From the IMG/VR virus record IMGVR_UViG_3300023202_000247, positions 257,462-321,461 of that record: a DNA stretch of 64,000 nt. The stretch is one strand, 5' to 3'. Position numbers and translations under genes: made by a program. How positions within the stretch are numbered: position 1 is the first letter of the stretch; each line of letters starts with the position of its first letter. This document shows, in pieces, positions 1-59,538 of this stretch. The notes beneath the pieces were generated by a model. It saw nothing but the letters and a program-made list of their open reading frames with translations, had not been told where the DNA came from and did not search any database.

Positions 1-2
1 AT

Positions 3-845: not shown

Positions 846-2893
846 TGGCATATGATTCTGACAGTTTTAGCGTCGGTCCCATTCCGGGATTTGCCCGCGA
901 GGGCACCGTAACTGGTGTCAACCTCAATCGCGGCACGATGAATATCAAACTCAATCTTGCAAAAAGTGATAAACAAACTTTTCGTGATATAGAGGTTGAA
1001 ATTCCCGCGGCGTGGACGGGTCCAAATGGAGAATGGGCCGGCGGTTGTCCAGCTAGAGGAAGTACTGTTTGGGCTGTACTAGCTACGGGTGGCAGGTGGA
1101 CTGTTTTAAATTATGTTCCAAGCGATGGTGCATTTGGAAATCGTAACACACCAGATAGTGGTTTTTCAACATCTAAAAACATTTTATCCTCCCTGAAGCC
1201 TGGTAGATATGTTTCACAGGTAAAAAATAATGTAAGGCATTTACTTGACCCCAACATTGGAATCCAGTTTGGGTCTCCTGTTGATTTCGTTCATGCTGAT
1301 CCTACAACACCAGTTTCTAAACGTAGTATTTATTCATACAAGTTCAAGCAAAGTTTTGCATTTACTGATGCATCTAGAAAAATTGAAGGACCGGTAAAAA
1401 GAGACAAAGGTTCCAATAGCCTAAGAGATATTTCAGGTTCAGCTCTTACATCACACTCTTATGATTCGTCTTTAACAACTATAGGGTTGGATCCTGTTAC
1501 AGCAGCAGGACCAGCATTTATAAGAAACCCACCTTTCATCGAAAGCAGAAAAGTTGTTTATGAGTACTCTTTTAGTTATGGCTATACAACCGATAGTGAA
1601 GAGGCAGTTGAATACGATACAAATATTCCACCAGATATAAGTGAAACGTTTAAAAGGCGTGATAGCAGGGCTGATGCTTTGAGTCTTTCTTTGGTTGAGC
1701 CAAATCAACTGATGGAAAGGATAGCTGGAACAGTTGTTGATATTTATGGAAACATTTTGGATATCAACAGAAACAAACTGCCCAACGGTTTGATTGATGA
1801 ATTGAATTTAAAGTCCAATGCTGAAAACCAATCGGCAACATTTGTCAATTTGCTTGCGCAAACGCGAAAGAGCATTGCTTATCATTTTGAATTGAATGCA
1901 AGAAAGAGCGAAGTTCCAAGCAGAGGAAGTTATTTCCCGGAATCAGACTCTCTGATAGATTACGCTAGAGACAGAAGTAGATTATCATTCGATGTAGATA
2001 AGGAAGGTCAGTTCAAGCTCAATGTTCCAGCGTCAAGCGAGACGGGCAATGTTGGTTTGTTAACACGTTATGAAAATTATAGTACGTTAAAAGCATTTGA
2101 AGATGATACAGACCCTAGAAATTTTGTTAGAAATAGTACCGAAACTGATATTTTTTTGGAAAGTTATGGTGTTGGAGTTGTAAGTTTGACGGGCGATGAT
2201 CAGGCTTTAGAAGGTTTTGCAGCTCCTGTTGATCGTATCACGGATACACCAATAAAACTTGGTACTGCTTATCATAACTTACAAGATACTTTACAAATTC
2301 ACAATAGAAGCTTGGAAGGTGATGATCTTCTACCTGTTCAGGTTTATGCAGATAGTTTGTTGAATGACACTTCATTGATTCCACCACCTGGAGACGTTGT
2401 AACTCCAAACATCACCGTCTCTGGTCCAAACGCAAATGCTGGTGGTAGAAGTGGAACAATTAATTTTGATGGAATGATTAGTTGTAATGTTGGTGCAAAC
2501 ACGGTTGATCGACAGTCTTTGTGGTTCGATACGGCTGGAGGTATCGTTGCAAACGTTGGCAGAGATGTTTTTGATAGAAGCTTGGCGGCTCGTTTTGATG
2601 GAGATATATTGGTTCAAATAGGTGGAACCACCGTATCAAACGATTCCAGATTTCAGAATTTGAACAATGGTGTTAAAGATGGTGTTTTAGATATAAGAGT
2701 TGTAAATAATGCTCAGATGCACATTGTAAGAATAGATAAAACCGGAGTGTCTATAGCATCGTCTGGTCGTTTGGATATTTTCTCAGCACAGGATATGAAG
2801 TTTACAGCTTTGGGTGATATGATATTTGACGCTGAAGGTATTTATATGTATGGCAAGAGATGGATTAAGCGTGAAGGAACGAAGACTATTTGA
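845..2893 (+). CDS. Baseplate central spike (gp5/VgrG/gpV-like)
   Basis: N-terminal OB-fold-like segment (REGTVTGVNLNRGTMNIKL...PARGSTVWAVL), C-terminal short beta-strand repeats (IVANVGRD, ILVQIGG, LDIFSAQDMKF), baseplate context. Confidence 0.6.
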   Translation: MAYDSDSFSVGPIPGFAREGTVTGVNLNRGTMNIKLNLAKSDKQTFRDIEVEIPAAWTGPNGEWAGGCPARGSTVWAVLATGGRWTVLNYVPSDGAFGNRNTPDSGFSTSKNILSSLKPGRYVSQVKNNVRHLLDPNIGIQFGSPVDFVHADPTTPVSKRSIYSYKFKQSFAFTDASRKIEGPVKRDKGSNSLRDISGSALTSHSYDSSLTTIGLDPVTAAGPAFIRNPPFIESRKVVYEYSFSYGYTTDSEEAVEYDTNIPPDISETFKRRDSRADALSLSLVEPNQLMERIAGTVVDIYGNILDINRNKLPNGLIDELNLKSNAENQSATFVNLLAQTRKSIAYHFELNARKSEVPSRGSYFPESDSLIDYARDRSRLSFDVDKEGQFKLNVPASSETGNVGLLTRYENYSTLKAFEDDTDPRNFVRNSTETDIFLESYGVGVVSLTGDDQALEGFAAPVDRITDTPIKLGTAYHNLQDTLQIHNRSLEGDDLLPVQVYADSLLNDTSLIPPPGDVVTPNITVSGPNANAGGRSGTINFDGMISCNVGANTVDRQSLWFDTAGGIVANVGRDVFDRSLAARFDGDILVQIGGTTVSNDSRFQNLNNGVKDGVLDIRVVNNAQMHIVRIDKTGVSIASSGRLDIFSAQDMKFTALGDMIFDAEGIYMYGKRWIKREGTKTI

Positions 2894-2907
2894 TATATTG
2901 GTAATGT

Positions 2908-3822
2908 ATGAACCGAAATGAACGCAAAATTCGTCAACGTTTTCGTGAAGATTGTAAAAAGTTTAAACCAAACTATGTTCCATCAGATTATGATTATCTA
3001 AAGTTTAAGGTTTGTAATATTTGTTTTAATTTCTTTTCAAGAAAAAAATTAACATATAGATGCGATAGTTGCAGGTACAAAAAAAGAAAACATAATGAAC
3101 GCATTGCTCACTTAAATAAGATGAAATTAAAATATAAAAAGCAATGCAAAAAGCTTTATGGAGAAAATTATATACCATCAGATGACGAATATCTATTTCA
3201 TAAATTTTGTAAAAAATGTAATAGCATAAAAAACTTAAAATGCTTTAGTTTTAAACGTGCAAACATGTGTTTAAATTGTAGCAACAAATCAAGACGTTTA
3301 TCTCAAAAAAAATTTCATGAAAATAATCCAGATGCTTCTTCTATATATAGAAGAAAAACTTATTTAAAAAATAAGAAAAAAATTCTTGAAAAGCAAAGAA
3401 AAGACCGTAAAAAGCCAGAAAATTTAGTAAAAGAACGAGAGCGAAAAAGAAAATATAGAATGAGAAGACCGGACCCTCGCAAAACAAATATATGTTTGAG
3501 ACTTCATCATAGTATTTCTGTTATAATACGTTCTGCTATTAAAAAAGATAGAGAATCTATAAAACATAAACTTGATTATACTATATATGAACTTAAAAAG
3601 CATTTAGAAGCACAATTTGAACCATGGATGAGCTGGGATAATTGGGGTATATATGATCCATCAACATGGACATGGCAAATTGATCATATTATACCACGGA
3701 GTAATCTACAATATAAAACAATGGATGATGAAAATTTTAAAAAATGCTGGGCCTTAGATAATTTACGACCTCTTAACTCTAAAGTTAATATAATGGATGG
3801 TGTAAATAGAAGGAGGCATTAA
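2908..3822 (+). CDS. Free-standing HNH-type endonuclease with N-terminal Cys-rich zinc-finger repeats
   Basis: C-terminal PWMSWDNWG...WQIDHIIP...CWALDNLRPL..N motif; four CxxC pairs; very basic; visibly more AT-rich than flanking genes. Confidence 0.7.
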   Translation: MNRNERKIRQRFREDCKKFKPNYVPSDYDYLKFKVCNICFNFFSRKKLTYRCDSCRYKKRKHNERIAHLNKMKLKYKKQCKKLYGENYIPSDDEYLFHKFCKKCNSIKNLKCFSFKRANMCLNCSNKSRRLSQKKFHENNPDASSIYRRKTYLKNKKKILEKQRKDRKKPENLVKERERKRKYRMRRPDPRKTNICLRLHHSISVIIRSAIKKDRESIKHKLDYTIYELKKHLEAQFEPWMSWDNWGIYDPSTWTWQIDHIIPRSNLQYKTMDDENFKKCWALDNLRPLNSKVNIMDGVNRRRH

Positions 3823-3823
3823 A

Positions 3824-5905
3824 ATGCCGTGCGACCCCGGAGCTAACACCCTTAACCCTTTGGCGCTAGGCCCACCGCCCGCAGTGCCTGGGTTTGGTTT
3901 GCCTTTTGGACCCATTCAAATACCATTTCCCGACGTTCAGCTTCCGGATGGAATTCCCGAAGACCTCTTACAGCTCATAGAAGACTTCTTAACAAATTTC
4001 CCCGGTGGACCATTTCGTCCAAATTTTGATAATTTTGCAAAAGATGTACTCGACGCCTTGGCTAGTCTGTTCAATCAACTAGCGCCATACCTCGGTTTAT
4101 ACAGATTTCTTCAAGCATTACTAAATATCATTCTTTGTATCATTGACATTCTTTGTGCAGCAACGAATCCATTTAGCATGTTACGTGCACTTCGTCGTTT
4201 GTTCAAACGATGCTTACCAGACTTTCTTAATCTTTTTCCATGGTTAGCTTTGATAGCAATGATTATAGCATTGCTACTTTTGTTATTGGCACTCATACAA
4301 TATCTCATAGAGCAAATCATTGCTTTGATTCAAGACATCATTGAAAACTTGCTGTTGTTATCTGAAGCTGTTCTGTTTGATGACTCTGAGAGACAGCTTG
4401 CAGCTGCTAGAAAAATTGCACAAGTTCTTTGCATCATAGAGCAATTGTTTGCGATACTGATTGCGTTTCAAGCTATACTTGCAATTATTAGTGCACTTGC
4501 TGATCTCGGTGGACGTACTGTGTGTGGAAAGCAAGGTTCCACTGGCGGTGATGATTTCGAGTGTTGTCCAGATGATGTGTGTCCACCATTCATTTTTAAC
4601 AATCCAGATGGTTTAACCGGTACACTTGGACAGCTTGTTTACTATCGAGAGATTGATAACAATGTATCACTGCTACCAGTTGGTATCGAACTGCCGCCAA
4701 TACGAAACGAAAGTTGGCAATTCTTTGATGCTGAAACTCAAACGTATAACTTTAGTGACATCATAACAAAAATTGATGATAATATATTTTGGCCTGAAGG
4801 TCAAACTTATGATGCTGATGCAACTGTAAAGAGAATACCTTATATTTTGGATATGCGTCTAACAGTTGATCCGGCAACATTCAACCTGCCAGATCCGGTT
4901 GGTGGCAGTCGTGAGTTTTTCATCAAAGATGTTGTTGTTATACGAAAACCAACACTTACTGTTACTGATTATGATGGCACCACCACTCCAGAAACAAACG
5001 GAGTATTGCGCTTGGAAGGTGGTCTCGTTTATGAAAGTGATGAAACAACACCATTCGATGTAGGTGGCAGTCAAGCAACTCTAAATGATTTCATACATTT
5101 AACTTCAGGCATTGGATTGCCTTCTAGTGATGATGGTTATGTTATCTCTAATATTTCTTATACATTGAGAATCAACCATCCGGTGCTCATACAAGAGGCA
5201 TTGATTACGATGGGATGTGATCCTGATTTGCAAATCGAGACCACTGCTCTCAATAGCACATTGGAAATTACTAGTGTGTTGAGCAGAATTGGAGAGTTGC
5301 CAGATGTAGCTGGCACAGTTGATTGTTTGAATGATACTATCGCTTCTATTAGAAGTGATGTATCACCAACAAATGTTGCTACTCAAAGCGCAAACCTTCA
5401 AACATGTTTGAATGATTTGAGAGAACAAACGTTAACAACATATGAAAATGCAGTTACTGCTGGAACCAATGTCTACTCTAGCACGATTGAGTTGGATACC
5501 GATGTTCAATTCATCAACAATCCTATAAATGTTAAAGTTACATTAAAAGATGCTGGTGGTACTACACTAAGCTTTAGAGTTCCAAATGACGTTGAAAACT
5601 CACTATCTTCTAAGATTGTAGGAGATCCATCTCTGGGAACGATAACAAACTTTGCATTTGACGGCTATGAATCTTTTGTTGCAGAGCTTACATCGCCGAC
5701 ACCTGGCGATGGATATTTGGGAGTATCATTCGATAATCAGGTATTTAGTAGTATAATCAATCGAGATAACGATGATTTGCCAACAACTATAATAGAAAAT
5801 AAGGTTCCATATACGTTTGTTGGCACTCCAGTATCTGCTGTTTCTGATGAAAATGGTCTGGAGCGTCGTGATGAGGTTGATATCGGAATTGATGGAAGCT
5901 CATAA
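3824..5905 (+). CDS. Putative tail/baseplate-associated protein with hydrophobic N-terminal helices
   Basis: 693-aa ORF, RBS AGGAGG, translationally coupled to next gene, long Leu/Ile/Ala stretches at about aa 135-230. Confidence 0.5.
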   Translation: MPCDPGANTLNPLALGPPPAVPGFGLPFGPIQIPFPDVQLPDGIPEDLLQLIEDFLTNFPGGPFRPNFDNFAKDVLDALASLFNQLAPYLGLYRFLQALLNIILCIIDILCAATNPFSMLRALRRLFKRCLPDFLNLFPWLALIAMIIALLLLLLALIQYLIEQIIALIQDIIENLLLLSEAVLFDDSERQLAAARKIAQVLCIIEQLFAILIAFQAILAIISALADLGGRTVCGKQGSTGGDDFECCPDDVCPPFIFNNPDGLTGTLGQLVYYREIDNNVSLLPVGIELPPIRNESWQFFDAETQTYNFSDIITKIDDNIFWPEGQTYDADATVKRIPYILDMRLTVDPATFNLPDPVGGSREFFIKDVVVIRKPTLTVTDYDGTTTPETNGVLRLEGGLVYESDETTPFDVGGSQATLNDFIHLTSGIGLPSSDDGYVISNISYTLRINHPVLIQEALITMGCDPDLQIETTALNSTLEITSVLSRIGELPDVAGTVDCLNDTIASIRSDVSPTNVATQSANLQTCLNDLREQTLTTYENAVTAGTNVYSSTIELDTDVQFINNPINVKVTLKDAGGTTLSFRVPNDVENSLSSKIVGDPSLGTITNFAFDGYESFVAELTSPTPGDGYLGVSFDNQVFSSIINRDNDDLPTTIIENKVPYTFVGTPVSAVSDENGLERRDEVDIGIDGSS

Positions 5906-7593
5906 TGGCCCTACCTGAAGAAATAAAAGAAAACGATATAGAAGATATCCAAACAATTGAGCTCGATCTTCAAGCTCTCGTGGACAAGTATGTCAAACCC
6001 ATTGAGCAATTCAGGAGTGCTGCGGCACCAGCTCAATTGTTAGCTCGTTCCGTACGCAGGAATGACTTTACTGTCACCGGGATAACTCAGGCTTTGAGTG
6101 ATGAGTTGAACAGAGCAAGTTTTGATCCATCAGAGGCTCAAGAAAGCCGAGCGCATTGTTTTTATAGAATGATTGGCTTGCCAGTAATGGATAGTAATGG
6201 TCTTTTTTACAATCCGGGTTTCAATCCGAGACAGACTGACAAAGAACTAATAGCAAATGCTAGAATTGCTAATGGTGTGCCAACAGCTGTAACTGAGTTA
6301 CAAACACGAAGAGAGTTTAGCGCTAGAAATAGAAAGGCTTATTTCAAAAGGGCCGGTCTTGACGCTTCAATTTTCGCAGTTGCGATGTCTCTCATTCCAA
6401 AAACTACATTTCAAATCATAGATACGGCTTTGGGACCTCAAGATTTGGATCCTCAGACGTATACTTTAACCGACAGAAAACAGATTCAAACCAGATATAC
6501 TGATTTGAATGGTAATGAATTGACAAAGTTTTTCGAAAGTGGAACTCATATATTGAGACCATTTTTAGTTGATCCAACTATTGCTGAAACTGTGATGCCA
6601 GAGCAACGACTTATCTGTCAACCATTTTTGAATGAAGCGGCTACCAGAATAGAGAAAAATAAAGAACTTCTCAGGCCGGTAATTGAATTCGTATTAAGGC
6701 TTAGACTGAGACAATCTCCAACAGATGCTAGCAATATTGCTGGGCAAGTTATTTTAAGCCTTGATAATAATGCTGATATTACCGGTTTGTCACAAGCAGA
6801 GTTAAAGCAATTATCGTTAGCTTTGCTAGATGAAAACAAGGTTGATGGGCAACAGGTAAACAGACTGTACACTACGCCGTTTGACATCGTTCAGTTGAAT
6901 AAATTTGTTAAAACTATAAAAGGTTTAATTAAAAAACTGGTTGATGCTGTTGAAGAAATTTTTGATATAAGCAGAAACATACCTTGGACACCATTGCCTG
7001 GCGATCGTGGGCCCGAGTTTCCATCTGATTTGACATTTAACGGATTGCTCATTGATAAGGTAAAAAATTCTGAATTAGAAAAAAGAATTCAAAGTTTGAC
7101 AATCAAAGCGCAAAACTCTGAAAGACAGGGAAATGCTCGTATTGCAACTGAAAAATTTGCTCTAAGCATGTATGAAAACGTAGAAAAAAACTTTCAGGCG
7201 GATTTAGATGAGGCAAAAGATCAAAGAAATGACTTCGTGACGAGAGGTGCGCAGGCTCTTGCCACGATTGAATACATTACAGGCGAGGTAAGTGGACTAG
7301 GATTGATAGACATTTTGTCAATTTATACTGCATTGTGGGCCATAGATTTGAACGTTTTGATTAGTTTATTAGATAATTCTGCTTTTGAAAGGCTATATGA
7401 GTTTAATCCTGATTTGAGAAATACTCAGGTACAAATTCGAAGAGATGGTGGTCCAGCATTTGGCGGTCTTGATGCCTTAGATCGTTTCGAATCACAAGTT
7501 ATCAGCATACTATCTTTTGCAGAAAGTGAATTCGAAAAACAGCTATCCAACCCAGTTGTTGGTGAGGGTGGCGAGCCTCCGAGGGAACAATGA
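5905..7593 (+). CDS. Hypothetical protein (putative virion/baseplate)
   Basis: 562-aa ORF coupled (TAATG) between structural genes; no recognisable motif. Confidence 0.45.
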   Translation: MALPEEIKENDIEDIQTIELDLQALVDKYVKPIEQFRSAAAPAQLLARSVRRNDFTVTGITQALSDELNRASFDPSEAQESRAHCFYRMIGLPVMDSNGLFYNPGFNPRQTDKELIANARIANGVPTAVTELQTRREFSARNRKAYFKRAGLDASIFAVAMSLIPKTTFQIIDTALGPQDLDPQTYTLTDRKQIQTRYTDLNGNELTKFFESGTHILRPFLVDPTIAETVMPEQRLICQPFLNEAATRIEKNKELLRPVIEFVLRLRLRQSPTDASNIAGQVILSLDNNADITGLSQAELKQLSLALLDENKVDGQQVNRLYTTPFDIVQLNKFVKTIKGLIKKLVDAVEEIFDISRNIPWTPLPGDRGPEFPSDLTFNGLLIDKVKNSELEKRIQSLTIKAQNSERQGNARIATEKFALSMYENVEKNFQADLDEAKDQRNDFVTRGAQALATIEYITGEVSGLGLIDILSIYTALWAIDLNVLISLLDNSAFERLYEFNPDLRNTQVQIRRDGGPAFGGLDALDRFESQVISILSFAESEFEKQLSNPVVGEGGEPPREQ

Positions 7594-8021
7594 GTTTTGA
7601 TTTGAAATTGAAACAGGGTGATTTAGCTATAGGTTCAGATGGTGATTTAGCCATAGTTGAAAATTCAGAGAAATTGACACAAGAGGTTTTGAAGATATTA
7701 ACAACTAGAATAGGAGCCAATCCATTTTTTCCATGGTATGGTTCACCCATTGATAAATCTTTAATTGGAAATGCGTTCGAGGAACGTTTCGTGGCGGCAG
7801 TTGCCTCCAATCAAGTTCGAGGCTCTTTAGAAAATTTGCAACGTCTTCAAGAAGAAGAGTTAAAAAAAGGTGTTCTAATAACACCTCAAGAGCAAATAGC
7901 TGCGATACAAGACATAGATGTTAGAAGAAATACCGTAGACCCTCGTTTTTATTCACTCACACTAACCGTACTTAGCAAAGCATTTACCAGGGTAAATACC
8001 AATCTTACAGTTTCTCTTTGA
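7590..8021 (+). CDS. Baseplate wedge subunit, gp25/GPW family
   Basis: DLKL..GDLAIG.DGDL...KLTQEV.KIL.T..G.NPFFPWYGS...LIG pattern; 143 aa; directly before baseplate J. Confidence 0.85.
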   Translation: MSFDLKLKQGDLAIGSDGDLAIVENSEKLTQEVLKILTTRIGANPFFPWYGSPIDKSLIGNAFEERFVAAVASNQVRGSLENLQRLQEEELKKGVLITPQEQIAAIQDIDVRRNTVDPRFYSLTLTVLSKAFTRVNTNLTVSL

Positions 8022-8065
8022 TTATCGACAAAAGCCTTGTGGTATGCATTGTTTTGCATATCGAT

Positions 8066-8077
8066 GATATATAAATA
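8066..8077 (+). promoter_or_regulatory. Putative late promoter GATATATAAATA
   Basis: Identical 12-mer also at 40812-40823; contains the T4 late-promoter consensus TATAAATA; intergenic, upstream of baseplate J. Confidence 0.55.
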
Positions 8078-8098
8078 CCTGGATTAACAAGGCTTTAA

Positions 8099-11000
8099 AT
8101 GGTTCGCATACGCAAAGTAAATGATATTATATTAAGCTCTCTAGATTTCTATCGTTCAGCTCAACCGCGCCTAGATACGAAGCCTGGAACCATATCCAGA
8201 GATATTCTGGTGGATGGCCCATCTGCGCAAATAGCTAGATTGTATGAAGAGTTGGCGCGCATCAAAGATTCTCAGTCAATTAGAACGGCTCTCGGTGTCG
8301 ATCTTGATAGGCTTGGAGCAAACTTTGGCAAGAGTAGAAAACAGGGTAGCAAGGCTAGCGGGCAAGCTTTAGTTACTTTCAACGAGATAGATGCTGATAT
8401 TCCAATTAGTCGTGGTGATATCGTAACAGCAAATAATGGTGCAACATTTACAGTAACAACAAATACGACTGTTGCGGCAAATAATATAAATGTTTATAGA
8501 GCTACTGCCTCTAAGTTTAGAAGCGATTTAGATTTTGTTGGAATAACGGATCAATATGCTGTTGAGGTTTCGGTTGAGGCAACAGCCATCGGTCGATTGG
8601 GAAATGTTAGCAAATATTCCCTTGCTACCATCAGCACCCCTGGAGCCAGCAATGTTACAAATGCATCTTCTTTTGGTGGTGGCACTGATGCTCAAGACGA
8701 TGCAGCTTTCCGTAGTAATATTTTAGGCGTTTTTGGTGGTGCTGCGGCAGGAACAGAAGAGGGTTATCGACAAAAGGCCAGAGAAGACAATGCTGTTCTG
8801 GACGCAATAGTTGTTGGTCCTGGTAATCCTTTGATGACTCGTGATGGTACACAGGTATTTACGGCCGAAGACGGAACTCAAACCATCATAAGTGAAGGTA
8901 CTGGTGGAAAAGTAGATATTTATATTTTTGGTATCAGGCTTGTTGAAATATTAGACAGTTATATTTACAGAGATCAAAGTAACACTGGTGATCCAACTAA
9001 TACAGCAAACGATTTTGTATTGGGACAAATAGAAGCTGATGAGGGTAAAACTGTTGCTCGCAAGCGTTTGGATGATTTGCAAACTGGAGTTTTACCAAAT
9101 CAACCGGCTAACGACATCATTGAGGTTAGTGGGTCCAGCAGCGGCTCTAATTTCACAGCAAAGAGCACTGATATTTTGGGAAGAGTGACGGGAAACTACG
9201 AATTGGTTCGTGATACCGGTGCGTTTGCAGGAAGCCCATGGGGCTTTGACAAGCTCAGGTGGATTGATGATAGAATAAGAGATTTTAATGAATCACAAAC
9301 AAAGGGTAGATTCAACGGACAAGACGCCTTGTCTTTCTCTGATGTCACGAGAGTTGGAGCTATAACTCAAGATATTACTGTTGTAAATGAAAATAGCAGG
9401 GTTTCTAGTAGTGACAGAACAAGCATACAATTGAGCCATTCTCCAGTAGTTACAGTTAGTCGTGTTTTCAACCTAACAACTGGTGAGCGTTATGTTGTCT
9501 CCAGCCAAAATCCCGATGGTGATGGCAGTTTGAATGAAACTGGTCGTATTACCATAAGCGGCAATACATTACCAGCAACTAGTGATACATTGCAGGTTGA
9601 TTATACTTGGCGCTTGGAATATGATCCTAACTTTGATTATGATAATATAGACAAAAGCTCCAACCCGAGAAGCGCCGTTGATAGTGTTGATTGGGGATTC
9701 AACAATGCTGTTCGCAGAGAGCAACAAAATGTTGTTGTTAATGGTAGTCAAAAAACAGTTACTGTTACACATCCAATTACATCTGTAATAAGCGTAAACA
9801 CATTTGTAAGTGAGGCGAGCACTGTAACGTTGGTACAGGGTCGTTTGGCTGTCGTTGTATCAAATACAGTTGCGAATGTTGTTAGTATAGAAAAAGTGTC
9901 TGATGGTGCAGAACTATTTGATACCAGCAATGATGATGGAAGTATCAGTGGTCTAACCATATTTTTGCCAACAGACACAGTCGGCGTAGTTGGAAATTCA
10001 GTTACAGTAATTTATAATGCCGAAGACGTTTATACTTCTGATGGTATTAGTGGAAGTTTTAATGGTAACGTTATAACATTGAGTCAATCAGCATCAGTTA
10101 CTGCTGGCACCATTGTAGAATGTAATTATATAGCAAATGTAAGAACAATTTTGAGCACCACTCTTTTGCCTGCGTTGCCAGCAGTGCGAAACGGTAACGC
10201 ATTCAATACAACGTCACAAAACAATATCGGTACACAACCATATACTTTCGTGTTCAGTGGCAATGTCGTTGAACAAAACTTGAGATTGTCACCGTCCAGA
10301 CTCGGATTAACGATTGCTGGTAACATTTCTGCCGGTGTAATTACCGTCTCTGGAACGACGTTTAGCGGTGTATTTGACGGTGTGTTTACTGTTGGAACCG
10401 CCGGTTTAACGCAAAACCTATCTTCACTCGTCAAAAATGCAATAGGCATAAGTAGCTCTTCTTCAATATCATCCAACTATGAAGTTGTTAGAGTAATAAG
10501 CTGTAGTAAAGTTACAGCAACTGATTCTAACGATGTTTTGAGCGTAGATCATGACTATGACATCAAAGGTTATGAGCTTAGAAACAATACGTTTGTTAAA
10601 GAGGAAGCTATTGTTGATTCAACATTATCAACAACAGAGTTTACACTTCCATCAACTGAAGGTAATATAGATGAAACACCAGAGGTTGGTGACAAGTTAC
10701 AAGTAACTTTTTACATAGCAAATACAGATGCCAGTGAAAACGTTTCATTTAGCAAATCTGGAACATTGTACACTGACAATATATTTGCAATTGTGGACAC
10801 TATTGCAATTTCTAGTGGATTTACGAGTGGCGATTCACAAACAGCAAGTTTGTCCGTTACAGCTCAGAACCAGCCACAGGCTGGAACGAGGTATAATGTT
10901 GCATATGATTACATTGCTCCAAAAAGCAATGAGCGTATATCTATCAGATATAACGAAAACAAGTTGGTAGCGGATACTACTTTAAATATTGAAAATGTTA

Positions 11001-11338
11001 GAACAATAAGTTCTGATGTTTTGGTTAAATCTGCATCTCCAATTTTAGTAGACGCAACTCTCAATATAGTTGTTTCACAGGGATTTGAAAGCTCTTCTAC
11101 TTTGGTACAACAAAATGTGCAAGATGCTGTTACTAGTGCTTTGAATGCAACTAATCTTGGAACTATAGTTGATGCATCTGATTTGATAGAAGTTGCATAT
11201 ACTGTAGATGGTGTTGATCGTATAAGGGTTATATATTTTAATATCAATGGTCTAAATGGTAGTGCACTAAGTATAGAGGCAGAAGACAATGAATATTTGC
11301 AAGCAAATATTGTAACAGTTAATGTAGAGACTAGATAA
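8099..11338 (+). CDS. Baseplate J/gp6-like wedge protein with large insertions
   Basis: KPGTISRDIL, ALGVDLDRLGANFG, VEATAIGRLGNV, GGTDAQDDAAFR motifs; C-terminal V..AL..TNLG..V..SDLI..AY.VDGV. Confidence 0.85.
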   Translation: MVRIRKVNDIILSSLDFYRSAQPRLDTKPGTISRDILVDGPSAQIARLYEELARIKDSQSIRTALGVDLDRLGANFGKSRKQGSKASGQALVTFNEIDADIPISRGDIVTANNGATFTVTTNTTVAANNINVYRATASKFRSDLDFVGITDQYAVEVSVEATAIGRLGNVSKYSLATISTPGASNVTNASSFGGGTDAQDDAAFRSNILGVFGGAAAGTEEGYRQKAREDNAVLDAIVVGPGNPLMTRDGTQVFTAEDGTQTIISEGTGGKVDIYIFGIRLVEILDSYIYRDQSNTGDPTNTANDFVLGQIEADEGKTVARKRLDDLQTGVLPNQPANDIIEVSGSSSGSNFTAKSTDILGRVTGNYELVRDTGAFAGSPWGFDKLRWIDDRIRDFNESQTKGRFNGQDALSFSDVTRVGAITQDITVVNENSRVSSSDRTSIQLSHSPVVTVSRVFNLTTGERYVVSSQNPDGDGSLNETGRITISGNTLPATSDTLQVDYTWRLEYDPNFDYDNIDKSSNPRSAVDSVDWGFNNAVRREQQNVVVNGSQKTVTVTHPITSVISVNTFVSEASTVTLVQGRLAVVVSNTVANVVSIEKVSDGAELFDTSNDDGSISGLTIFLPTDTVGVVGNSVTVIYNAEDVYTSDGISGSFNGNVITLSQSASVTAGTIVECNYIANVRTILSTTLLPALPAVRNGNAFNTTSQNNIGTQPYTFVFSGNVVEQNLRLSPSRLGLTIAGNISAGVITVSGTTFSGVFDGVFTVGTAGLTQNLSSLVKNAIGISSSSSISSNYEVVRVISCSKVTATDSNDVLSVDHDYDIKGYELRNNTFVKEEAIVDSTLSTTEFTLPSTEGNIDETPEVGDKLQVTFYIANTDASENVSFSKSGTLYTDNIFAIVDTIAISSGFTSGDSQTASLSVTAQNQPQAGTRYNVAYDYIAPKSNERISIRYNENKLVADTTLNIENVRTISSDVLVKSASPILVDATLNIVVSQGFESSSTLVQQNVQDAVTSALNATNLGTIVDASDLIEVAYTVDGVDRIRVIYFNINGLNGSALSIEAEDNEYLQANIVTVNVETR

Positions 11339-18018: not shown

Positions 18019-18020
18019 TT

Positions 18021-21505: not shown

Positions 21506-21529
21506 CTTGCTGTTATATATTTCATGTAA

Positions 21530-23625: not shown

Positions 23626-23792
23626 TAGTAGTAGCCATAGTATTGATTCTACCATACATATCAGTGTTATTTACTTTTGCCATTACAACATTTTTTGGTG
23701 CTAGTGCCATTGTTTGCATCAAACTTTCGTTATTTGTCGGTATTACAGTTGCAATATTGCTTGGATTTTTAATCATAAAAGGACAATTATGA
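23586..23792 (+). CDS. Small two-TM membrane protein
   Basis: 68 aa with two hydrophobic stretches; ATGA-type overlap with next gene. Confidence 0.45.
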   Translation: MEKPSWKYYLKTLIVVAIVLILPYISVLFTFAITTFFGASAIVCIKLSLFVGITVAILLGFLIIKGQL

Positions 23793-26243: not shown

Positions 26244-26244
26244 C

Positions 26245-29273: not shown

Positions 29274-29279
29274 CTATTT

Positions 29280-29288
29280 GATATATAA
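29280..29288. promoter_or_regulatory. Putative bidirectional late promoter core (GATATATAA)
   Basis: Centre of a 21-bp gap between divergent ATGs at 29273(-) and 29295(+). Confidence 0.5.
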
Positions 29289-29294
29289 CTAGTT

Positions 29295-30047
29295 ATGGTA
29301 TCTGGTGCAAAAATTGTTGTCATGATTCCAAGTTACAACAATTGTAAATGGTATGACAAAAATCTGATGTCGGTTTTGTCTCAAGATTATGACAACTTTC
29401 GTATTATTTATACTGACGATTGCTCGACAGATAAAACCGGTGAGTTGGTTAAGAGTTTTCTGGAAAAGAAAAACTATTTTGATAAAGTAACTTTTATTCA
29501 AAATACTGAACGTTTGGGGGCATTGGCTAATCAATATAATATGGTTCATTCTTGTGATGATGATGAGATAGTTATTACTTTAGATGGTGATGATTGGTTT
29601 GCCAACGCACAAGTTTTACGTCGAGTTGAACAAGCTTATGCAGATGGCAAAACTTGGATCACATATGGGCAATACAAAGATTGGCCGTCTGGAGGGCGCG
29701 GATGTTCCAGGCCCATACCAAAAGAGATAATTGATAAAAATTGTTATCGTACATCACCATGGTGTACTTCTCACTTGAGAACATTTTACGCATGGCTGTT
29801 CAAGAAAATCAAGCGAGAAGATTTGATGGATGGCAATGGTCAGTTTTACCAAATGACTGGTGACTTGTTTACAATGTTTCCCATGATTGAAATGGCTGGG
29901 TATCATTCTAAATACATTGATGATATTTTGTATATTTACAATGTGTCAAATCCTATAAATGATAGTAAAGTTAATAGGACGAGGCAGATAGATTTAGAAC
30001 GAATTGCTCGTTACAAACCACGTTATACACCTCTAAAAGAAAAATGA
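29295..30047 (+). CDS. Glycosyltransferase, GT2
   Basis: VMIPSYN, IIYTDDCSTD, ITLDGDDW. Confidence 0.9.
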   Translation: MVSGAKIVVMIPSYNNCKWYDKNLMSVLSQDYDNFRIIYTDDCSTDKTGELVKSFLEKKNYFDKVTFIQNTERLGALANQYNMVHSCDDDEIVITLDGDDWFANAQVLRRVEQAYADGKTWITYGQYKDWPSGGRGCSRPIPKEIIDKNCYRTSPWCTSHLRTFYAWLFKKIKREDLMDGNGQFYQMTGDLFTMFPMIEMAGYHSKYIDDILYIYNVSNPINDSKVNRTRQIDLERIARYKPRYTPLKEK

Positions 30048-30757
30048 TCACATTTTTGGAATTGGGAAAATATGGACGTATGGGAAATGCCATGTTTCAA
30101 ATGGCCGCAGCTATTGGCTTAGCTACGAAACATAATGATTCATATATATTTCCCAAATGGGAATATGAAAATTTTTTCAACATAAATTCTTTTGATGACA
30201 ATGTTCGTGCAAGGGTACGTTCAAAATATGAAGAGTCACATTATGTTTACAAAGAGATACCTTACAAAGAAAACTTGAATATTCATGGTTATTTTCAAAG
30301 TTATAAATATTTTAATCACTGTGAAGGTGTTATCAAAAAAGAACTTTCTCCAAATTTGACTTTTCCAAAATTTGAGCGTGTTTGCAGCGTTCATGTTAGA
30401 AGAGGTGACTACTTAAAATTTCCACGGCATCATCCATTATGTTCAATTGATTATTACAAAAAAGCTATGCAACAAATGGATGTAGAAAAGTTCATGATTT
30501 TCAGTGATGATATTCCGTGGTGCAAACAACATTTTCATGGAAACGTGGAATTTGTTGAGGGAAATCCGTGTTACACCGATCTTGCCCTCATGATGAGTTG
30601 TGATCATCACATCATTGCAAACTCATCATTTTCGTGGTGGGGTGCATGGCTTGCTGGTTCGAAAAAAGTTATTGCTCCTGCCAGATGGTTTGGAGTTGCA
30701 TTGGAACGTACACACCCAACTCATGATTTGATTCCTTCAAAGTGGGTGAGACTATGA
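30044..30757 (+). CDS. Alpha-1,2-fucosyltransferase, GT11
   Basis: GRMGNAMFQMAA, HGYFQSYKYF, SVHVRRGDY, HHIIANSSFSWWGAWL. Confidence 0.92.
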   Translation: MITFLELGKYGRMGNAMFQMAAAIGLATKHNDSYIFPKWEYENFFNINSFDDNVRARVRSKYEESHYVYKEIPYKENLNIHGYFQSYKYFNHCEGVIKKELSPNLTFPKFERVCSVHVRRGDYLKFPRHHPLCSIDYYKKAMQQMDVEKFMIFSDDIPWCKQHFHGNVEFVEGNPCYTDLALMMSCDHHIIANSSFSWWGAWLAGSKKVIAPARWFGVALERTHPTHDLIPSKWVRL

Positions 30758-31137
30758 CAAACGTTAAATATAGCATTAATGAAACTTTTTTTAGTGAAAT
30801 TAATTCAAAAGATAAAGCATATATTCTTGGTTTTATATGGGGCGACGGTTGCATTACTACTAAGCTGTATAGGTTAAGTATTGAACTAGCCTCTTCTGAT
30901 CTTGAAATATTATATTGCAAAAAACATAAAAATAGCACTAAGAAAAAGCTTAGGGAGGCGAATTTAGGTGAAAAATGCGGCAATTCAAAGCTTAAAGATA
31001 AAGATGTTGGCTTTATCAAAAGACATCCTAATCATAAAGCATCAGAGTTGGCCAAAATGTTTAATATCTCTCCAGGAACTGTCAGATCCATAAGACGGGG
31101 AGACACATGGTCTCATGTGAAAGTTAAGGAGGTTTAA
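30754..31137 (+). CDS. Truncated/chimeric homing-endonuclease remnant (LAGLIDADG N-half + NUMOD3-like + HTH)
   Basis: KAYILGFIWGDGCI, then KHKNSTKKKLREANLG, then ELAKMFNISPGTVRSIRRGDTW; only 127 aa. Confidence 0.6.
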   Translation: MTNVKYSINETFFSEINSKDKAYILGFIWGDGCITTKLYRLSIELASSDLEILYCKKHKNSTKKKLREANLGEKCGNSKLKDKDVGFIKRHPNHKASELAKMFNISPGTVRSIRRGDTWSHVKVKEV

Positions 31138-31138
31138 A

Positions 31139-32117
31139 ATGGTTAAGGTTTTGTTTTTGCCCCTTAACTATGGTTAGCGATGTTGTCCAACAAGGCGTTT
31201 ACGATGCTTTTGAAGAGGCTGGATGTGCACTAGAGGTGTTTGATTATTTCAAAAAATATCATCAAACTAAAAACATTCAAACAACACGCCAATCATTAAT
31301 TAACATTGCAAAACGATTCAAGCCTCACTTGATTCATTTGCAAATACAGCATACATCAATCATAGATTATAAAACCATTCAAAGATTGAAAGCTGAGAAC
31401 CCACGCACAATTGTTACAAATTGGACGGGTGATGTGCGCAACTACGTCCCCCCAACTTACAAGAAAATATCTGAAGTTGCTGATTTTAATTTAATATCAT
31501 CTACTGGGCAAATCTCTATGTTTGAAAACTCTCTTGGTAAGAGGGTTAACTATTGGCAAATTGGATTCAATCCAAAGTTGTATTTTCCCAAAAACAAAGG
31601 TGGTCAATTCAAGCACGATTGTGTATTCATAGGACATCACAATTCACGCGAAAACTATCCCGGTGCAGCTCAGCGTTTGAAGGCATGTACGCTTTTACGT
31701 CGTGCATTCAATGATAGGTTTTTATTGCATGGCTCTCATTGGCCAAAAAGCCTGAGAAGCCGTGGTGCATTGGATCAAAGAAAAGTTAATGAGGCGTATT
31801 CCAACTCTCTTTGTAATATAAGCATCAGCCATTATAATGATTTAGAAAACTATTTTTCTGATAGACTTTTGATGTGTATGGCTTCTGGAAGGCCAACCAT
31901 TGCATTGAAATTTCCAGGCTGGCAATCTTTTTTCGCAGATATGGGAGATATAGTTATTGCACGAAGTATAGATGAAATTCCAAACAAAGTGCGTATGTTG
32001 GTAGACAATCCCGATCTGGCTAATTACATCGGTCAAAACGGGGCTGCCAAGGTTATGGCAGAGCATACATACTATAGTCGCATAATAGAACTTTTAGAAA
32101 TGGTCAACTTGAGATAA
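31139..32117 (+). CDS. CgeB/DUF3880-like glycosyltransferase with an apparent +1 frameshift near 31175
   Basis: AAGGAGG RBS then ATG 31139 (MVKVLFLPLNYG*); main frame 31170-32117 has YFSDRLLMCMASG and GAAKVMAEHTYYSRI. Confidence 0.75.
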
Positions 32118-32847
32118 TAGCCTCAAACTCATCTTTTAGCTTTTCGTTCAAAGTCTTTTTCTCATCCCTGGTGAGCAAAGACATATCCATATTTGCTTTA
32201 GCTATCTTTGTGCTGTTGTTTGCTTGTGGATTGCCATATTTAAAGTTTGGCTTTCTCAAAACAAAATCACCTTTGATACGCCACATATCTTTTGCTCTTT
32301 CATTAAAATAAGCAATCGATTTGGCGTTGCCAGCATTGCATAGCTTTTCTAGACCAAGAACTATTTTATCTTTATTCGTATTTTTAACAGCATTAAGTAG
32401 CTGGTTATAATCCGCTAGAAACTTGTCCATTGGCATAAAGTTTCTATTATGTTGTTTGCTTAACAATTTGTAACTGTTGTATAAAGCTTTTGGTTCTCTA
32501 AATACAAATACCAATACGTTAGATTTATTCATCATTTTGCTGATGTATGGTTTCATCTTTCCATCATCTGGACGAAATGTCTCTTTAATACCACCAATGC
32601 TAAATGTATCATCATTGTTTAGCCTTTGTCGAGTTGCTCTAAAAACACTATCTGCATTGTTACAGTTTAAGTTTTTTAATTTATCAAATGTTATAGATTT
32701 GGGATTTGTTAAGTATATCCATTGTGGTTCACACAGGCAAAATCCATTGTCGAGTGAGTTCAAAATGTTACACACTATAGTTGTACCACCACGTGGTAAA
32801 CCGAGTACTGAAAAAAGTTGCTTGTTTTTTTGAGTTTCAATCTTCAT
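32104..32847 (-). CDS. Sulfotransferase (P-loop family)
   Basis: GLPRGGTT 5'-PSB loop; FVFREPKALYNS 3'-PB motif; start refined to 32847. Confidence 0.7.
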   Translation of the reverse strand: MKIETQKNKQLFSVLGLPRGGTTIVCNILNSLDNGFCLCEPQWIYLTNPKSITFDKLKNLNCNNADSVFRATRQRLNNDDTFSIGGIKETFRPDDGKMKPYISKMMNKSNVLVFVFREPKALYNSYKLLSKQHNRNFMPMDKFLADYNQLLNAVKNTNKDKIVLGLEKLCNAGNAKSIAYFNERAKDMWRIKGDFVLRKPNFKYGNPQANNSTKIAKANMDMSLLTRDEKKTLNEKLKDEFEAIISS

Positions 32848-32853
32848 ATTGAG

Positions 32854-32861
32854 TATATATA
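32854..32861. promoter_or_regulatory. Putative bidirectional late promoter core (TATATATA)
   Basis: Lies within a 16-bp gap between divergent ATGs at 32847(-) and 32864(+). Confidence 0.5.
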
Positions 32862-32863
32862 CC

Positions 32864-33505
32864 ATGGATAAATATAAGATAATAGCAGATCACTATGACG
32901 AATGCTTTAAAAAACACGGTGATACGGCTCAGGGGGCTGACTGGCCCAATGAAGAAGACCTGCAAGAGCGTTTTAAGGTTTTATCAGCAAATGTAAAACA
33001 ACAGTCAAGTTTAACAACGATATTAGACTTTGGGTGCGGCACTGGCCGTCTGTTATCTTATCTTTTGAATAATAAAAACTTTTTGTTTTTATATTATGGT
33101 GTTGATATAAATCAAGCAGTCATTGACGCTGCTGAGAAAAAATTTGATAATATAAATTTAGTAAAGTTTTATTGTCACGATTTAAGAGAAGATAATTTAT
33201 CATTGGCGCAAGATGCATCAACGACATTTGGTCATGTTATAGCCAATGGTGTTTTTACTGAAAAGCTTTCATTATCTGAAGATGACATGTGGGATTTTTT
33301 CACACAAAAAGTCGGTCTTCTTTGGAAACTTACCAAAAACTCTTTAGCATTCAATGTCATGAGTAAACACGTTGATTATGAACGAGATGACTTGTTTCAC
33401 GTGTCTTATGATAAAATGGCTTCTTTTGTTAGAACCATGACTAATGAATATGCATTTCGTTGTGATTATGGTTTATATGAATACACTGTGTACATGTATA
33501 GGTAA
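32864..33505 (+). CDS. Class I SAM-dependent methyltransferase
   Basis: ILDFGCGTG, YYGVDIN, VIANGVF; start refined to ATG 32864. Confidence 0.88.
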   Translation: MDKYKIIADHYDECFKKHGDTAQGADWPNEEDLQERFKVLSANVKQQSSLTTILDFGCGTGRLLSYLLNNKNFLFLYYGVDINQAVIDAAEKKFDNINLVKFYCHDLREDNLSLAQDASTTFGHVIANGVFTEKLSLSEDDMWDFFTQKVGLLWKLTKNSLAFNVMSKHVDYERDDLFHVSYDKMASFVRTMTNEYAFRCDYGLYEYTVYMYR

Positions 33506-33507
33506 AA

Positions 33508-37628: not shown

Positions 37629-37663
37629 GTTCTACAAATATGCATTCTGTGCCATATATTTTG

Positions 37664-40244: not shown

Positions 40245-40807
40245 GTTTAGTTATTGCTGCTATGGGTAGATGTGGTTCTACCATGCTTTTTTCTACACTA
40301 AAGAGAAAGTTTTACAAAGCCATATTTGAAAAAGATTTAGCATCATCGTATGCTGATGGTTTAATCATCAAGACTCACGACTTTGCACCTAAACAATTGA
40401 AAAACTGTAAAGTTATTTATCTATTTGGAGATCCTAGAAATATAGTTCTTTCAGCTCATACTAAAGGTAAAATTGATAGGAGAAGACATTATAGAAACAT
40501 GCATGCTCCTTTCAAAGAAGAATTTTTGCAGAATGATACATTTGTAATTAAAGATACTTTGAGGCTGGAAGATAATTTTGATTCATGGTATAAAAAACAA
40601 TCATTTCCTTTGTTGACTCTTAGATACGAAACTCTTTATGATAATCGAGACGTGTTGAAACAATTTTTGGGATTTCCTCCTATGTTGCCAAAACCCAGAA
40701 ACAGAACGACGAACTGGGAAAAGTTTCCCAGAGCTAACAGGTTGGACAAAACATATGCAGGTCTTTTGAAAAAAATAGAAGAGGCTGAAGATGCAAAAAT
40801 TTGGTAA
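40241..40807 (+). CDS. Sulfotransferase-like protein (P-loop)
   Basis: GRCGSTML, IKTHD, YLFGDPRNIVLS, LRYETL; start refined to 40241 after AAGGAG. Confidence 0.7.
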   Translation: MSLVIAAMGRCGSTMLFSTLKRKFYKAIFEKDLASSYADGLIIKTHDFAPKQLKNCKVIYLFGDPRNIVLSAHTKGKIDRRRHYRNMHAPFKEEFLQNDTFVIKDTLRLEDNFDSWYKKQSFPLLTLRYETLYDNRDVLKQFLGFPPMLPKPRNRTTNWEKFPRANRLDKTYAGLLKKIEEAEDAKIW

Positions 40808-40811
40808 CGCT

Positions 40812-40823
40812 GATATATAAATA
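40812..40823 (+). promoter_or_regulatory. Putative late promoter GATATATAAATA
   Basis: Identical to 8066-8077; ends 3 nt before the gmd ATG; no RBS present. Confidence 0.55.
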
Positions 40824-40826
40824 AGC

Positions 40827-59467: not shown

Positions 59468-59538
59468 GTCTTCGTAAAAGCCCCTGATGGCGCTGCATAA
59501 TACGAGATATACAGTGTACTTACTAACTCGAGGACAAA

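What the first reader, a model, noticed from the sequence alone, without database searches (positions are those of the whole stretch)
2893..40826. ATATAT core in every intergenic gap of the structural and glycan blocks, with bidirectional, probably leaderless promoters
Seen: all seven gaps longer than 10 bp in the first 41 kb contain ATATAT, at 2893, 8067, 21515, 29281, 32855, 37654 and 40813. Distances to the next start fall into two groups: 9-15 nt with no RBS (2908, 21530, 29295+, 29273-, 32864+, 32847-, 37664+, 40827) and about 31-32 nt (8099, 37628-, and the variant ATATAC at 59507 to 59539). The short gaps in the 44-59 kb replication block lack it and mostly have SD sequences. Three divergent gene pairs only 16-35 bp apart share one self-complementary core. 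Inference: a -10-only late promoter (cf. T4 TATAAATA) firing both ways and giving leaderless mRNAs. It would place the glycan locus in the late regulon with the virion genes.
Basis: partly seen in the sequence, partly recalled or inferred. Interest (0 to 1): 0.7.

Follow-up and report, generated by a model that had tools for sequence, protein, structure and literature searches.

The report
Phage promoter motif TGATATAT beside start codons
The ATATAT in these short gene gaps is real and is the core of a one-directional 8-base motif, TGATATAT, conserved in a clade of uncultivated giant phages, that most likely acts as a -10-only promoter set so close to the start codon that the mRNAs have almost no leader; it is a new example of a known kind of phage promoter and is not confirmed by RNA data.

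Summary
All seven ATATAT sites and their distances are correct and far beyond chance. An eighth gap over 10 bp (31138-31169) lacks the motif. The 59507 "variant" belongs to a second motif, GCATAAT.

The real element is directional: TGATATAT(W).
- In the 321-kb genome, 13 of 18 sense-strand copies are intergenic (10.7% of the DNA); 0 of 8 antisense copies are.
- Ten of the 13 lie in the structural and glycan half.
- There is no conserved -35.
- The motif ends 6-11 nt (mode 8-9) before an ATG with no room for a Shine-Dalgarno (SD) sequence.

GATATAT is also enriched in sense-strand gaps of 41-60%-identical relatives. There it sits before orthologous genes, either 8 nt from the ATG or 14-54 nt away with an SD sequence.

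One divergent pair (29273-/29295+) keeps a two-way arrangement; its relative has a palindromic GATATATC.

Best reading (0.6): a phage-specific -10-only promoter, perhaps read by the conserved phage sigma at 51892-52566, giving leaderless or near-leaderless mRNAs.

Not shown: transcription start sites (no RNA run was listed), timing, which sigma reads the motif, and two-way firing at 32855(+) and 37654.

It is a new member of a known kind: T4 late promoters, extended -10 promoters, and the leaderless middle/late mRNAs of Thermus phage phiYS40.

The parts
2891..2898 (+). Exact TGATATAT. Its TGA is the stop codon of ORF 845-2893. It ends 9 nt before ATG 2908 (endonuclease VII-like gene), with no SD sequence.
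8065..8072 (+). Exact TGATATAT, 26 nt before ATG 8099 (gp6-like baseplate wedge), with a weak SD sequence AAGG at 8089-8092. The G002/G005 ortholog has GGATATAT at the same 26-nt distance.
8031..8096 (+). A 10-bp inverted repeat (8031-8040 and 8087-8096) that encloses the 8065 motif. In read-through RNA it would pair the AAGG region next to the AUG. An RNA started after the motif would lack the 5' arm.
   Evidence: dG -21.2 kcal/mol, z -2.76; function inferred
21513..21520 (+). Variant TTATATAT, 9 nt before ATG 21530 (glycosyltransferase). The start codon is supported by residue-1-to-1 alignment with three orthologs. The G005 ortholog has an exact TGATATAT upstream of its ATG.
29279..29286 (+). 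Exact TGATATAT, 8 nt before ATG 29295 (family 2 glycosyltransferase).
29281..29288 (-). TTATATAT on the minus strand, 7 nt before the minus-strand ATG at 29273 (gene 28338-29273). It overlaps the plus-strand motif. The start codons are 22 bp apart.
32857..32864 (-). TGGTATAT on the minus strand, 9 nt before the minus-strand ATG at 32847 (gene 32104-32847). The plus-strand reading toward ATG 32864 fits poorly: TATAT ends only 5 nt before the ATG and no TG precedes it.
37654..37659 (.). ATATAT that fits neither strand: CCATATAT 4 nt before ATG 37664, and AAATATAT 26 nt before the minus-strand ATG at 37628. The plus-strand gene may instead start at 37640. Status uncertain.
   Evidence: no orthologs in the four relatives
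40811..40818 (+). Exact TGATATAT, 8 nt before ATG 40827 (GDP-mannose 4,6-dehydratase). The G005 ortholog has TGATATAT 32 nt before its start.
31138..31169 (+). A gap over 10 bp that lacks the motif and holds a hairpin. Strains in runs X5 and X6 skip 30758-30976 and 30758-31178 respectively, so ORF 30742-31137 and (in X6) this gap are an indel in this genome.
59495..59512 (+). GCATAAT, then 5 nt, then ATATAC: a second upstream motif class. It follows the terminator at 59444-59467 and precedes an SD sequence and TTG 59539. The orthologous gap of relative L139 has the same layout.
51892..52566 (+). Sigma-70-family factor (224 aa) with regions 2, 3.0-like and 4. It is the candidate reader of the motif and is conserved in all four relatives and in over 100 metagenomic proteins.
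44950..44957 (+). The only exact TGATATAT in the window that lies inside a coding region (gene 44258-45226). Significance unknown.

Best explanation
TGATATAT(W) is the -10-type core of a phage-specific promoter class with no -35 element. It serves the virion, packaging and glycan genes of this uncultivated jumbo phage and its relatives. Where it ends 6-11 nt (mode 8-9) before an ATG, transcription should start at or within a few bases of the start codon. That would give leaderless or near-leaderless mRNAs that need no SD sequence. Where it lies 14-54 nt upstream, the mRNA has a normal leader with an SD sequence. The most likely reader is host core RNA polymerase carrying the phage sigma factor (window 51892-52566). 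That sigma keeps a region 2 and a region 3.0-like helix, the parts that read a -10 hexamer and the TG of an extended -10. In very short divergent gaps the AT-symmetric core lets one site serve both strands; this is best supported at 29273-/29295+.

Shown: the motif, its strand and gap bias, its regional bias, its spacing, and its conservation.
Inferred: promoter function, the start-site position, late timing, the sigma assignment, and two-way firing.
For: - Sense strand: 13 of 18 copies are intergenic, against 10.7% of the DNA (binomial P 1.2e-9). Antisense strand: 0 of 8.
- Ten copies lie fully inside gaps, against 0.7-1.4 expected from Markov models trained on the gaps themselves.
- One-mismatch variants are mostly not enriched.
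- Nothing upstream is conserved.
- Density is 1.29 per kb of gap in 150-321 kb against 0.11 in 1-150 kb.
- Downstream genes include portal, gp6-like baseplate wedge, patatin-like lipase, glycosyltransferases and GDP-mannose dehydratase.
- GATATAT is among the top gap-enriched sense-strand 7-mers in G002, G003 and G005.
- It precedes orthologs of five G000 genes at varying distances, with an SD sequence when it is far from the start.
- Without using any annotation, GATATAT-N8-ATG occurs 17 times on the sense strand of four genomes, against a mean of 5.4 at other spacings.
- All nine close-spaced G000 starts are ATG.
- SD words or TATAT/GCATA words are the enriched signals in the 20 nt before starts.
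- The sigma is conserved in every relative and aligns to RpoS/sigma-70 regions 2.1-3.0 and region 4.
- Published precedents: leaderless middle/late mRNAs in phiYS40 (PMC3594737); -10 elements adjacent to ORFs (PMC12340547); two-way promoters arising from -10 symmetry, with divergent start sites 7-25 bp apart (PMC10268837).
Against: - No transcription start-site or expression data: no RNA run was listed.
- If TATATW is the hexamer, its last base is A in 8 of 13 sites, whereas sigma-70-family -10 elements keep T at -7.
- The sigma has a region 4, yet no -35 motif is seen.
- Three of the 13 gap copies lie in the early half. The one before tRNA-Met overlaps a host-type TTGACG-N18-TATAAT promoter.
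- Enrichment is weak in G001.
- 37654 and the plus direction at 32855 do not fit.
- A second motif, GCATAA(T), occupies the same position before other structural genes (terminase, a virion protein), so 'the late promoter' is not one class.
Confidence: 0.6

Rival explanations
1. The motif is an extended -10 promoter (TGnTAnnnT type) read by the host primary sigma, with no need for the phage sigma. The temporal class is then set by other factors.
For: - TG sits one base before TATAT in every exact copy, and the TG-less variants AGATATAT, CGATATAT and GGATATAT are not enriched.
- There is no -35, as in extended -10 promoters.
- Copies at G000 87229 and 223231 contain TATAAT.
- From my own knowledge, not checked here: the middle/late promoters of phiYS40 are host-polymerase extended -10 promoters.
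Against: - The base between TG and the hexamer is always A, and the hexamer is TATATW with A at the last place in 8 of 13 sites. Neither is typical of primary-sigma sites.
- In relatives the T of TG is less conserved than GATATAT.
- TGnTATAAT itself is not enriched in gaps (2 in gaps, 9 in coding sequence).
- Host-type TTGACA-N17-TAnnnT sites cluster elsewhere, at 65-120 kb.
Confidence: 0.2
2. The motif is not a promoter. It is a translation signal on polycistronic mRNA: an AU-rich, unstructured standby or enhancer site that replaces an SD sequence at a fixed distance from the start codon.
For: - Most window sites lie inside long same-strand gene arrays with no terminator upstream.
- The distance to the ATG is narrow, 6-11 nt.
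- No SD sequence is present at those sites.
Against: - The same word occurs 14-54 nt upstream, with a normal SD sequence in between, before orthologs and before gp6-like.
- The strict 8-base identity, including TG, is more typical of protein-DNA recognition than of an AU-rich tract.
- ATATAT-type cores follow terminator hairpins at G000 204047, 212817 and 216113.
- Divergent genes must have promoters inside their 16-23-nt gaps.
Confidence: 0.1
3. The motif is the operator of a phage DNA-binding regulator that sits over promoters of another kind. A candidate is the LuxR/GerE-type helix-turn-helix protein at G000 177204-177686, which is conserved in G001.
For: - The core is partly palindromic (GATATATC in G005), as many operators are.
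- A conserved helix-turn-helix protein exists.
Against: - The strand bias is strong (13 against 0 in gaps), and most copies have no dyad partner.
- Gaps of 14-24 nt leave no room for a separate -10 element.
Confidence: 0.08
4. It is a chance by-product of AT-rich spacers.
For: The gaps are AT-rich (71% A+T).
Against: Shuffles, Markov backgrounds, the strand asymmetry and the conservation in relatives all reject it.
Confidence: 0.01

Closest known systems
Phage T4 late promoters (TATAAATA; gp55 with gp33 and the gp45 clamp). Details are from my own knowledge.
   Same: An 8-base -10-only element with no -35, placed in very short gaps inside long same-strand arrays of virion genes. GATATATA matches TATAAATA at 6 of 8 places. 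The 8031/8087 hairpin resembles T4 cases in which only the transcript that starts inside the hairpin exposes the ribosome site.
   Different: The consensus differs, and TATAAATA is not enriched in gaps here (5 in gaps, 23 in coding sequence). The sigma here has a region 4, whereas gp55 does not. T4 late mRNAs have leaders with SD sequences.
Middle/late transcription of Thermus phage phiYS40
   Same: Most middle/late mRNAs lack a leader (PMC3594737), so the promoter -10 sits directly before the ORF.
   Different: From my own knowledge, phiYS40 uses host holoenzyme on extended -10 promoters. Here a conserved phage sigma is the likelier reader, the hexamer is non-canonical, and the hosts clearly use SD sequences.
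-10 element adjacent to ORFs (Deinococcus-Thermus, Actinobacteria)
   Same: TANNNT-like element a few bases before the start codon, no SD sequence, AUG start (PMC12340547).
   Different: That is a host-wide habit with a canonical TANNNT. Here it is confined to a subset of phage genes, with a strict 8-mer.
Bacterial two-way promoters arising from -10 symmetry (Warman et al. 2021, as cited in PMC10268837)
   Same: Divergent starts 7-25 bp apart share one AT-symmetric core. Here the divergent start codons are 17, 22 and (in G005) 24 bp apart.
   Different: In that class -11A and -7T pair reciprocally at 18 bp. An alternating ATATAT cannot supply both A at -11 and T at -7. Here both products would be leaderless mRNAs.
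Extended -10 promoters (TGnTATAAT)
   Same: TG one base before the hexamer; no -35 needed.
   Different: The middle base is fixed as A, the hexamer is TATATW, and T at -7 is not kept.

Membership tests
T4-type late promoter | Consensus TATAAATA centred near -10 | tested here: not met
   The motif is TGATATAT(W). TATAAATA is not enriched in gaps: 5 in gaps against 23 in coding sequence on the sense strand.
T4-type late promoter | No -35 element | tested here: met
   No information content from -45 to -1 across the 13 sites.
T4-type late promoter | Read by a gp55-type sigma that lacks region 4, with gp33 and the sliding clamp | not tested
   Only sigma-70 region 2 and region 4 profiles were searched. 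One sigma with both regions was found. No gp55, gp33 or gp45 profiles were run.
Extended -10 promoter | TG at -15/-14, one base before the hexamer | tested here: met
   Variants lacking T1 or G2 are not enriched in G000 gaps. In relatives the T is looser.
Extended -10 promoter | Hexamer TAnnnT with conserved T at -7 | tested here: not met
   The last hexamer position is A in 8, T in 4 and C in 1 of 13 sites.
Leaderless-mRNA promoter (-10 adjacent to the ORF) | -10 element about 6-8 nt before the start codon, with no SD sequence | tested here: met
   The motif ends 6-11 nt before the ATG, mode 8-9. The N8 peak is 17 against 5.4 across four genomes.
Leaderless-mRNA promoter (-10 adjacent to the ORF) | The RNA 5' end coincides with the start codon | not testable with these tools
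   No RNA run was listed.
Two-way promoter by -10 symmetry | Divergent start sites 7-25 bp apart around a symmetric core | tested here: inconclusive
   Start codons are 22 bp apart at 29273/29295, 17 bp at 32847/32864 and 24 bp in G005. Start sites are unknown. Only the 29281 pair and its G005 ortholog fit the motif on both strands.
Sigma-70 family (the protein at 51892-52566) | Region 2 and region 4 domains | tested here: met
   Sigma70_r4_2 scores above its cut-off (33-36 bits). Sigma70_r2 scores 20-22 bits, below its cut-off. phmmer aligns residues 55-150 to RpoS/SigA regions 2-3.0.

The most novel reading that the evidence does not exclude
A whole clade of uncultivated jumbo phages (contigs up to about 460 kb) carries a compact phage sigma. 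It switches on virion and glycan genes from -10-only promoters placed to make leaderless mRNAs. These include back-to-back pairs in 16-24-bp gaps in which one symmetric core fires both ways. The hosts otherwise rely on SD sequences, so late translation would run through the leaderless pathway as a takeover strategy.
Probability: 0.3. Interest if true: 0.6.

Novelty: new member of a known kind. Interest (0 to 1): 0.45.

Why it matters
If correct, this gives a usable promoter model for a large, unstudied clade of giant phages. It would let transcription units, and probably the late regulon, be read from sequence alone, and it would place the phage's glycan-synthesis genes in the same regulon as the virion genes. 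It also pairs a conserved phage sigma with a candidate target that can be tested in vitro without culturing the phage. Finally, it would add a case of stage-specific leaderless expression in an SD-using host, and of minimal two-way promoters between genes 16-24 bp apart.

Tried and rejected
- RNA evidence: two run searches listed only DNA metagenome runs and no RNA run.
- Strain-level footprinting with read laying: strains in X5, X6 and X10 differ by about 5% overall. Around 32855 the stretch 32795-32898 is invariant, but local divergence is too low to mean anything. The 6-kb call lists only the best-supported 40 differences.
- A metagenome scan with the glycosyltransferase 29295-30047 gave 72 loci, mostly in unrelated gene contexts. 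Only 5 of 60 had ATATAT upstream, so it was no use for footprinting.
- No near-identical phage record. By protein, the nearest named kin is Bacillus phage G at 31% identity.
- A literature search for the literal motif found nothing relevant. The phiYS40 primary paper is not held.
- Classical -35/-10 sites are not enriched in window 1-20000: 69 found against 62 +/- 7 expected.
- Rfam found only the tRNA.
- Rejected readings:
  - Bacteroidota-type TAnnTTTG promoter. Only 5 of 13 sites have TTTG, none has the TA, and SD sequences are used.
  - Archaeal TATA box. The distance to the start is wrong, and the phage has a bacterial sigma and uses SD sequences.
  - Artefact of the TGA stop codon inside the motif. 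This can deplete at most one reading frame in coding sequence.
- The closer relative L140 (52.6% G+C) has no copy in its replication block. This says nothing, because G000 has none there either.
Full report
**Setting**

The window is bases 257462-321461 of a 321,461-bp linear IMG/VR virus record, estimated about 75% complete.
- Nearly all genes are on the plus strand.
- The DNA is held by microbial-mat and other metagenome runs.
- No named phage is close. By protein the nearest is Bacillus phage G, at 31% identity over part of a gp6-like baseplate protein.
- The first 41 kb of the window encode baseplate and tail-like proteins and a glycan block: glycosyltransferases, methyltransferase, aminotransferase, WbqC and GDP-mannose dehydratase.
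- 44-59 kb hold TubZ-like tubulin, UvsW-like and DnaB-like helicases, a sigma factor, and a ribonucleotide reductase with an intein.

Every ATATAT position and every quoted distance is correct. Using the gaps I could define in the first 41 kb (8 gaps, 238 nt), 7 hold ATATAT. When the gaps' own letters were shuffled, 20,000 trials never gave more than 4.

Three corrections apply:
1. There is an eighth gap, 31138-31169, that holds a hairpin and no ATATAT. Strains in runs X5 and X6 lack the preceding ORF, and the X6 strain lacks this gap too, so it is a strain-specific insertion.
2. The 37654 site is ambiguous.
3. The 59507 'variant' is part of another motif (see 'A second class' below).

**What the element is**

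Aligning all gap copies in the whole genome shows a longer, directional word: TGATATAT, followed by A or T.
- On the sense strand, 13 of 18 copies touch a gap, although gaps are 10.7% of the DNA (P 1.2e-9). On the antisense strand, 0 of 8 do.
- Ten copies lie wholly inside gaps, against 0.7-1.4 expected from Markov models of order 0-3 trained on the gaps themselves.
- Single-base variants are mostly not enriched.
- Nothing upstream is conserved, so there is no -35.
- Ten of the 13 copies lie between 159 and 298 kb, a twelve-fold higher density per kb of gap than in the first 150 kb.
- The genes that follow include the portal, the gp6-like baseplate wedge, an endonuclease VII-like protein, a patatin-like lipase, glycosyltransferases and GDP-mannose dehydratase.

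In the window:
- Exact copies are at 2891, 8065, 29279 and 40811, all in gaps, plus 44950 inside a gene.
- 21513 is TTATATAT.
- 32857-32864 on the minus strand is TGGTATAT.

**Spacing**

The motif ends 6-11 nt before an ATG at nine G000 genes, most often 8-9 nt, which leaves no room for an SD sequence. Three of these start codons, and that of gp6-like (26 nt from the motif), are backed by orthologs whose alignments begin at residue 1 or 2: portal, 21530 and 40827.

Counted without any gene calls, GATATAT-N8-ATG occurs 17 times on the sense strand of four genomes, against a mean of 5.4 at other spacings. After correction for 31 spacings, P is about 0.0015.

If TATATW is the -10 hexamer, an 8-nt spacer puts the A of ATG at about +1 to +2.

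**Relatives**

Six IMG/VR loci encode gp6-like proteins about 60% identical. I read four records whole: G001 (435 kb, complete), G002, G003 and G005.
- GATATAT is among the top gap-enriched sense-strand 7-mers in G002, G003 and G005. TGATATAT is 6 of 10 and 9 of 16 in gaps where gaps are 4-5% of the DNA. Enrichment in G001 is weak.
- The motif precedes orthologs of G000 genes 249069, 265560 (gp6-like, with the same 26-nt spacing), 278991, 285799- and 298288. The distances range from 8 to 54 nt, and an SD sequence is present when the motif is far from the start.
- A word that stays before the same genes while its distance to the start codon changes behaves like a promoter, not a ribosome signal.
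- SD sequences are plainly used in all five genomes.

**Two-way firing**

- *29273-/29295+.* The 21-nt gap reads TGATATAT-N8-ATG on the plus strand and TTATATAT-N7-ATG on the minus strand. The orthologous pair in G005 is separated by 23 nt centred on the palindrome GATATATC, which gives TGATATAT-N9-ATG one way and GATATAT-N8-ATG the other. That is good comparative support.
- *32847-/32864+.* The minus strand fits (TGGTATAT-N9-ATG). The plus strand does not.
- *37654.* Neither strand fits.
- *Other short divergent gaps.* TATATA-type cores also occur at G000 122235/122253, G003 25509/25527 and G001 433862/433884.
- *Geometry.* Start codons 17-24 bp apart fall within the 7-25 bp range described for bacterial two-way promoters (PMC10268837). 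An alternating ATATAT cannot, however, give both A at -11 and T at -7.

**Who reads it**

Only one full sigma-70-family protein was found, at window 51892-52566.
- It is 41-49% identical in all four relatives and has over 100 metagenomic homologs on contigs up to 463 kb.
- It aligns to RpoS/sigma-70 regions 2.1-2.4 and to the TI(R/K)IP helix of region 3.0, and it has a region 4.
- It lies in the SD-using replication block, which has no gap copy of the motif. That would suit a factor made before the genes it switches on.

This assignment is an inference. The host primary sigma, or another phage factor such as the LuxR-type protein at G000 177204-177686, remains possible.

**A second class**

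GCATAA(T) is also enriched in sense-strand gaps of 128-317 kb: 16 in gaps against 51 in coding sequence, with 8 found against 0.36 expected in proximal upstream segments.
- It precedes the large terminase, a virion protein and others, in some cases only 6-9 nt before the ATG.
- The window copy at 59495 follows an intrinsic terminator and is itself followed by ATATAC. The closer relative L139 has the same layout at the orthologous gap.
- So the structural half of the genome uses at least two -10-like words, and timing cannot be assigned from sequence.

**Limits**

- No RNA run was listed, so start sites, timing and leaderless status are inferred.
- Strain comparison was uninformative.

**Comparison with known systems**

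This works like a T4 late promoter (8-base, -10-only, inside arrays of virion genes). It also works like the leaderless middle/late units of Thermus phage phiYS40 (PMC3594737) and like -10-adjacent ORFs in Deinococcus-Thermus (PMC12340547).

It is not a member of the T4 class, because the consensus was tested and not met. It is also not a canonical extended -10, because T at -7 is not kept.

I rate it a new member of a known kind, with moderate interest.

Noticed in passing
G000 128-317 kb; window 59495-59501: A second gap-enriched sense-strand word, GCATAA(T). It precedes the terminase large subunit (G000 187113), a virion protein (231971) and others. It sometimes lies only 6-9 nt before the ATG, and once lies 5 nt before a TGATATAT (G000 249053).
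   Followed up: partly
window 8031-8040 and 8087-8096: A perfect 10-bp inverted repeat brackets the TGATATAT before the gp6-like gene. Only read-through RNA could pair the AAGG/AUG region, which resembles T4 genes whose ribosome site is freed only in the transcript that starts inside the hairpin.
   Followed up: partly
window 30758-31178: Contigs of related strains (runs X5, X6) skip this stretch and carry about 30 other letters instead. ORF 30742-31137 and, in the X6 strain, the hairpin gap are therefore an insertion in this genome.
   Followed up: partly
window 29276-29299: Two contigs of run X6 end and begin here, overlapping by 24 bases, exactly at the divergent promoter gap. This may be an assembly break at the AT-symmetric core.
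   Followed up: no
G000 1-600 and 872-7756: Seven 80-bp tandem repeats lie at the left end of the record, followed by about 6.9 kb with no confident ORF. The words AAGGATGCT and TGTGCCGTATCCTTAAAG are the most gap-enriched 8-mers in the genome.
   Followed up: no
G000 87210-87319: The only tRNA (Met, CAT anticodon) is preceded by a host-type TTGACG-N18-TATAAT promoter that overlaps a TGATATAT copy. The tRNA 5' end lies 7 nt after the TATAAT.
   Followed up: partly
G000 65-120 kb; G001 genome-wide: Host-type TTGACA-N15-19-TAnnnT sites lie in gaps of the presumed early region. CTTGACA is the top gap-enriched 7-mer in G001.
   Followed up: no
window 52579-56286: The ribonucleotide reductase large subunit is interrupted by an intein with a LAGLIDADG endonuclease domain. 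Relative L140 has an uninterrupted 889-aa version.
   Followed up: no
window 45246-46625: A TubZ/PhuZ-like tubulin gene, conserved in L139 and L140, next to a UvsW-like helicase.
   Followed up: no
G003 (L054-L060), e.g. oriented positions 440, 21025, 35669, 109818: In this relative the words GTATAAA and TATAAAT, which resemble the T4 late consensus, abut or overlap start codons (GTATAAATG). This suggests that the clade's -10 word has drifted.
   Followed up: partly
window 44950-44957: An exact TGATATAT lies inside the epimerase/dehydratase gene 44258-45226. It may be an internal promoter or chance.
   Followed up: no
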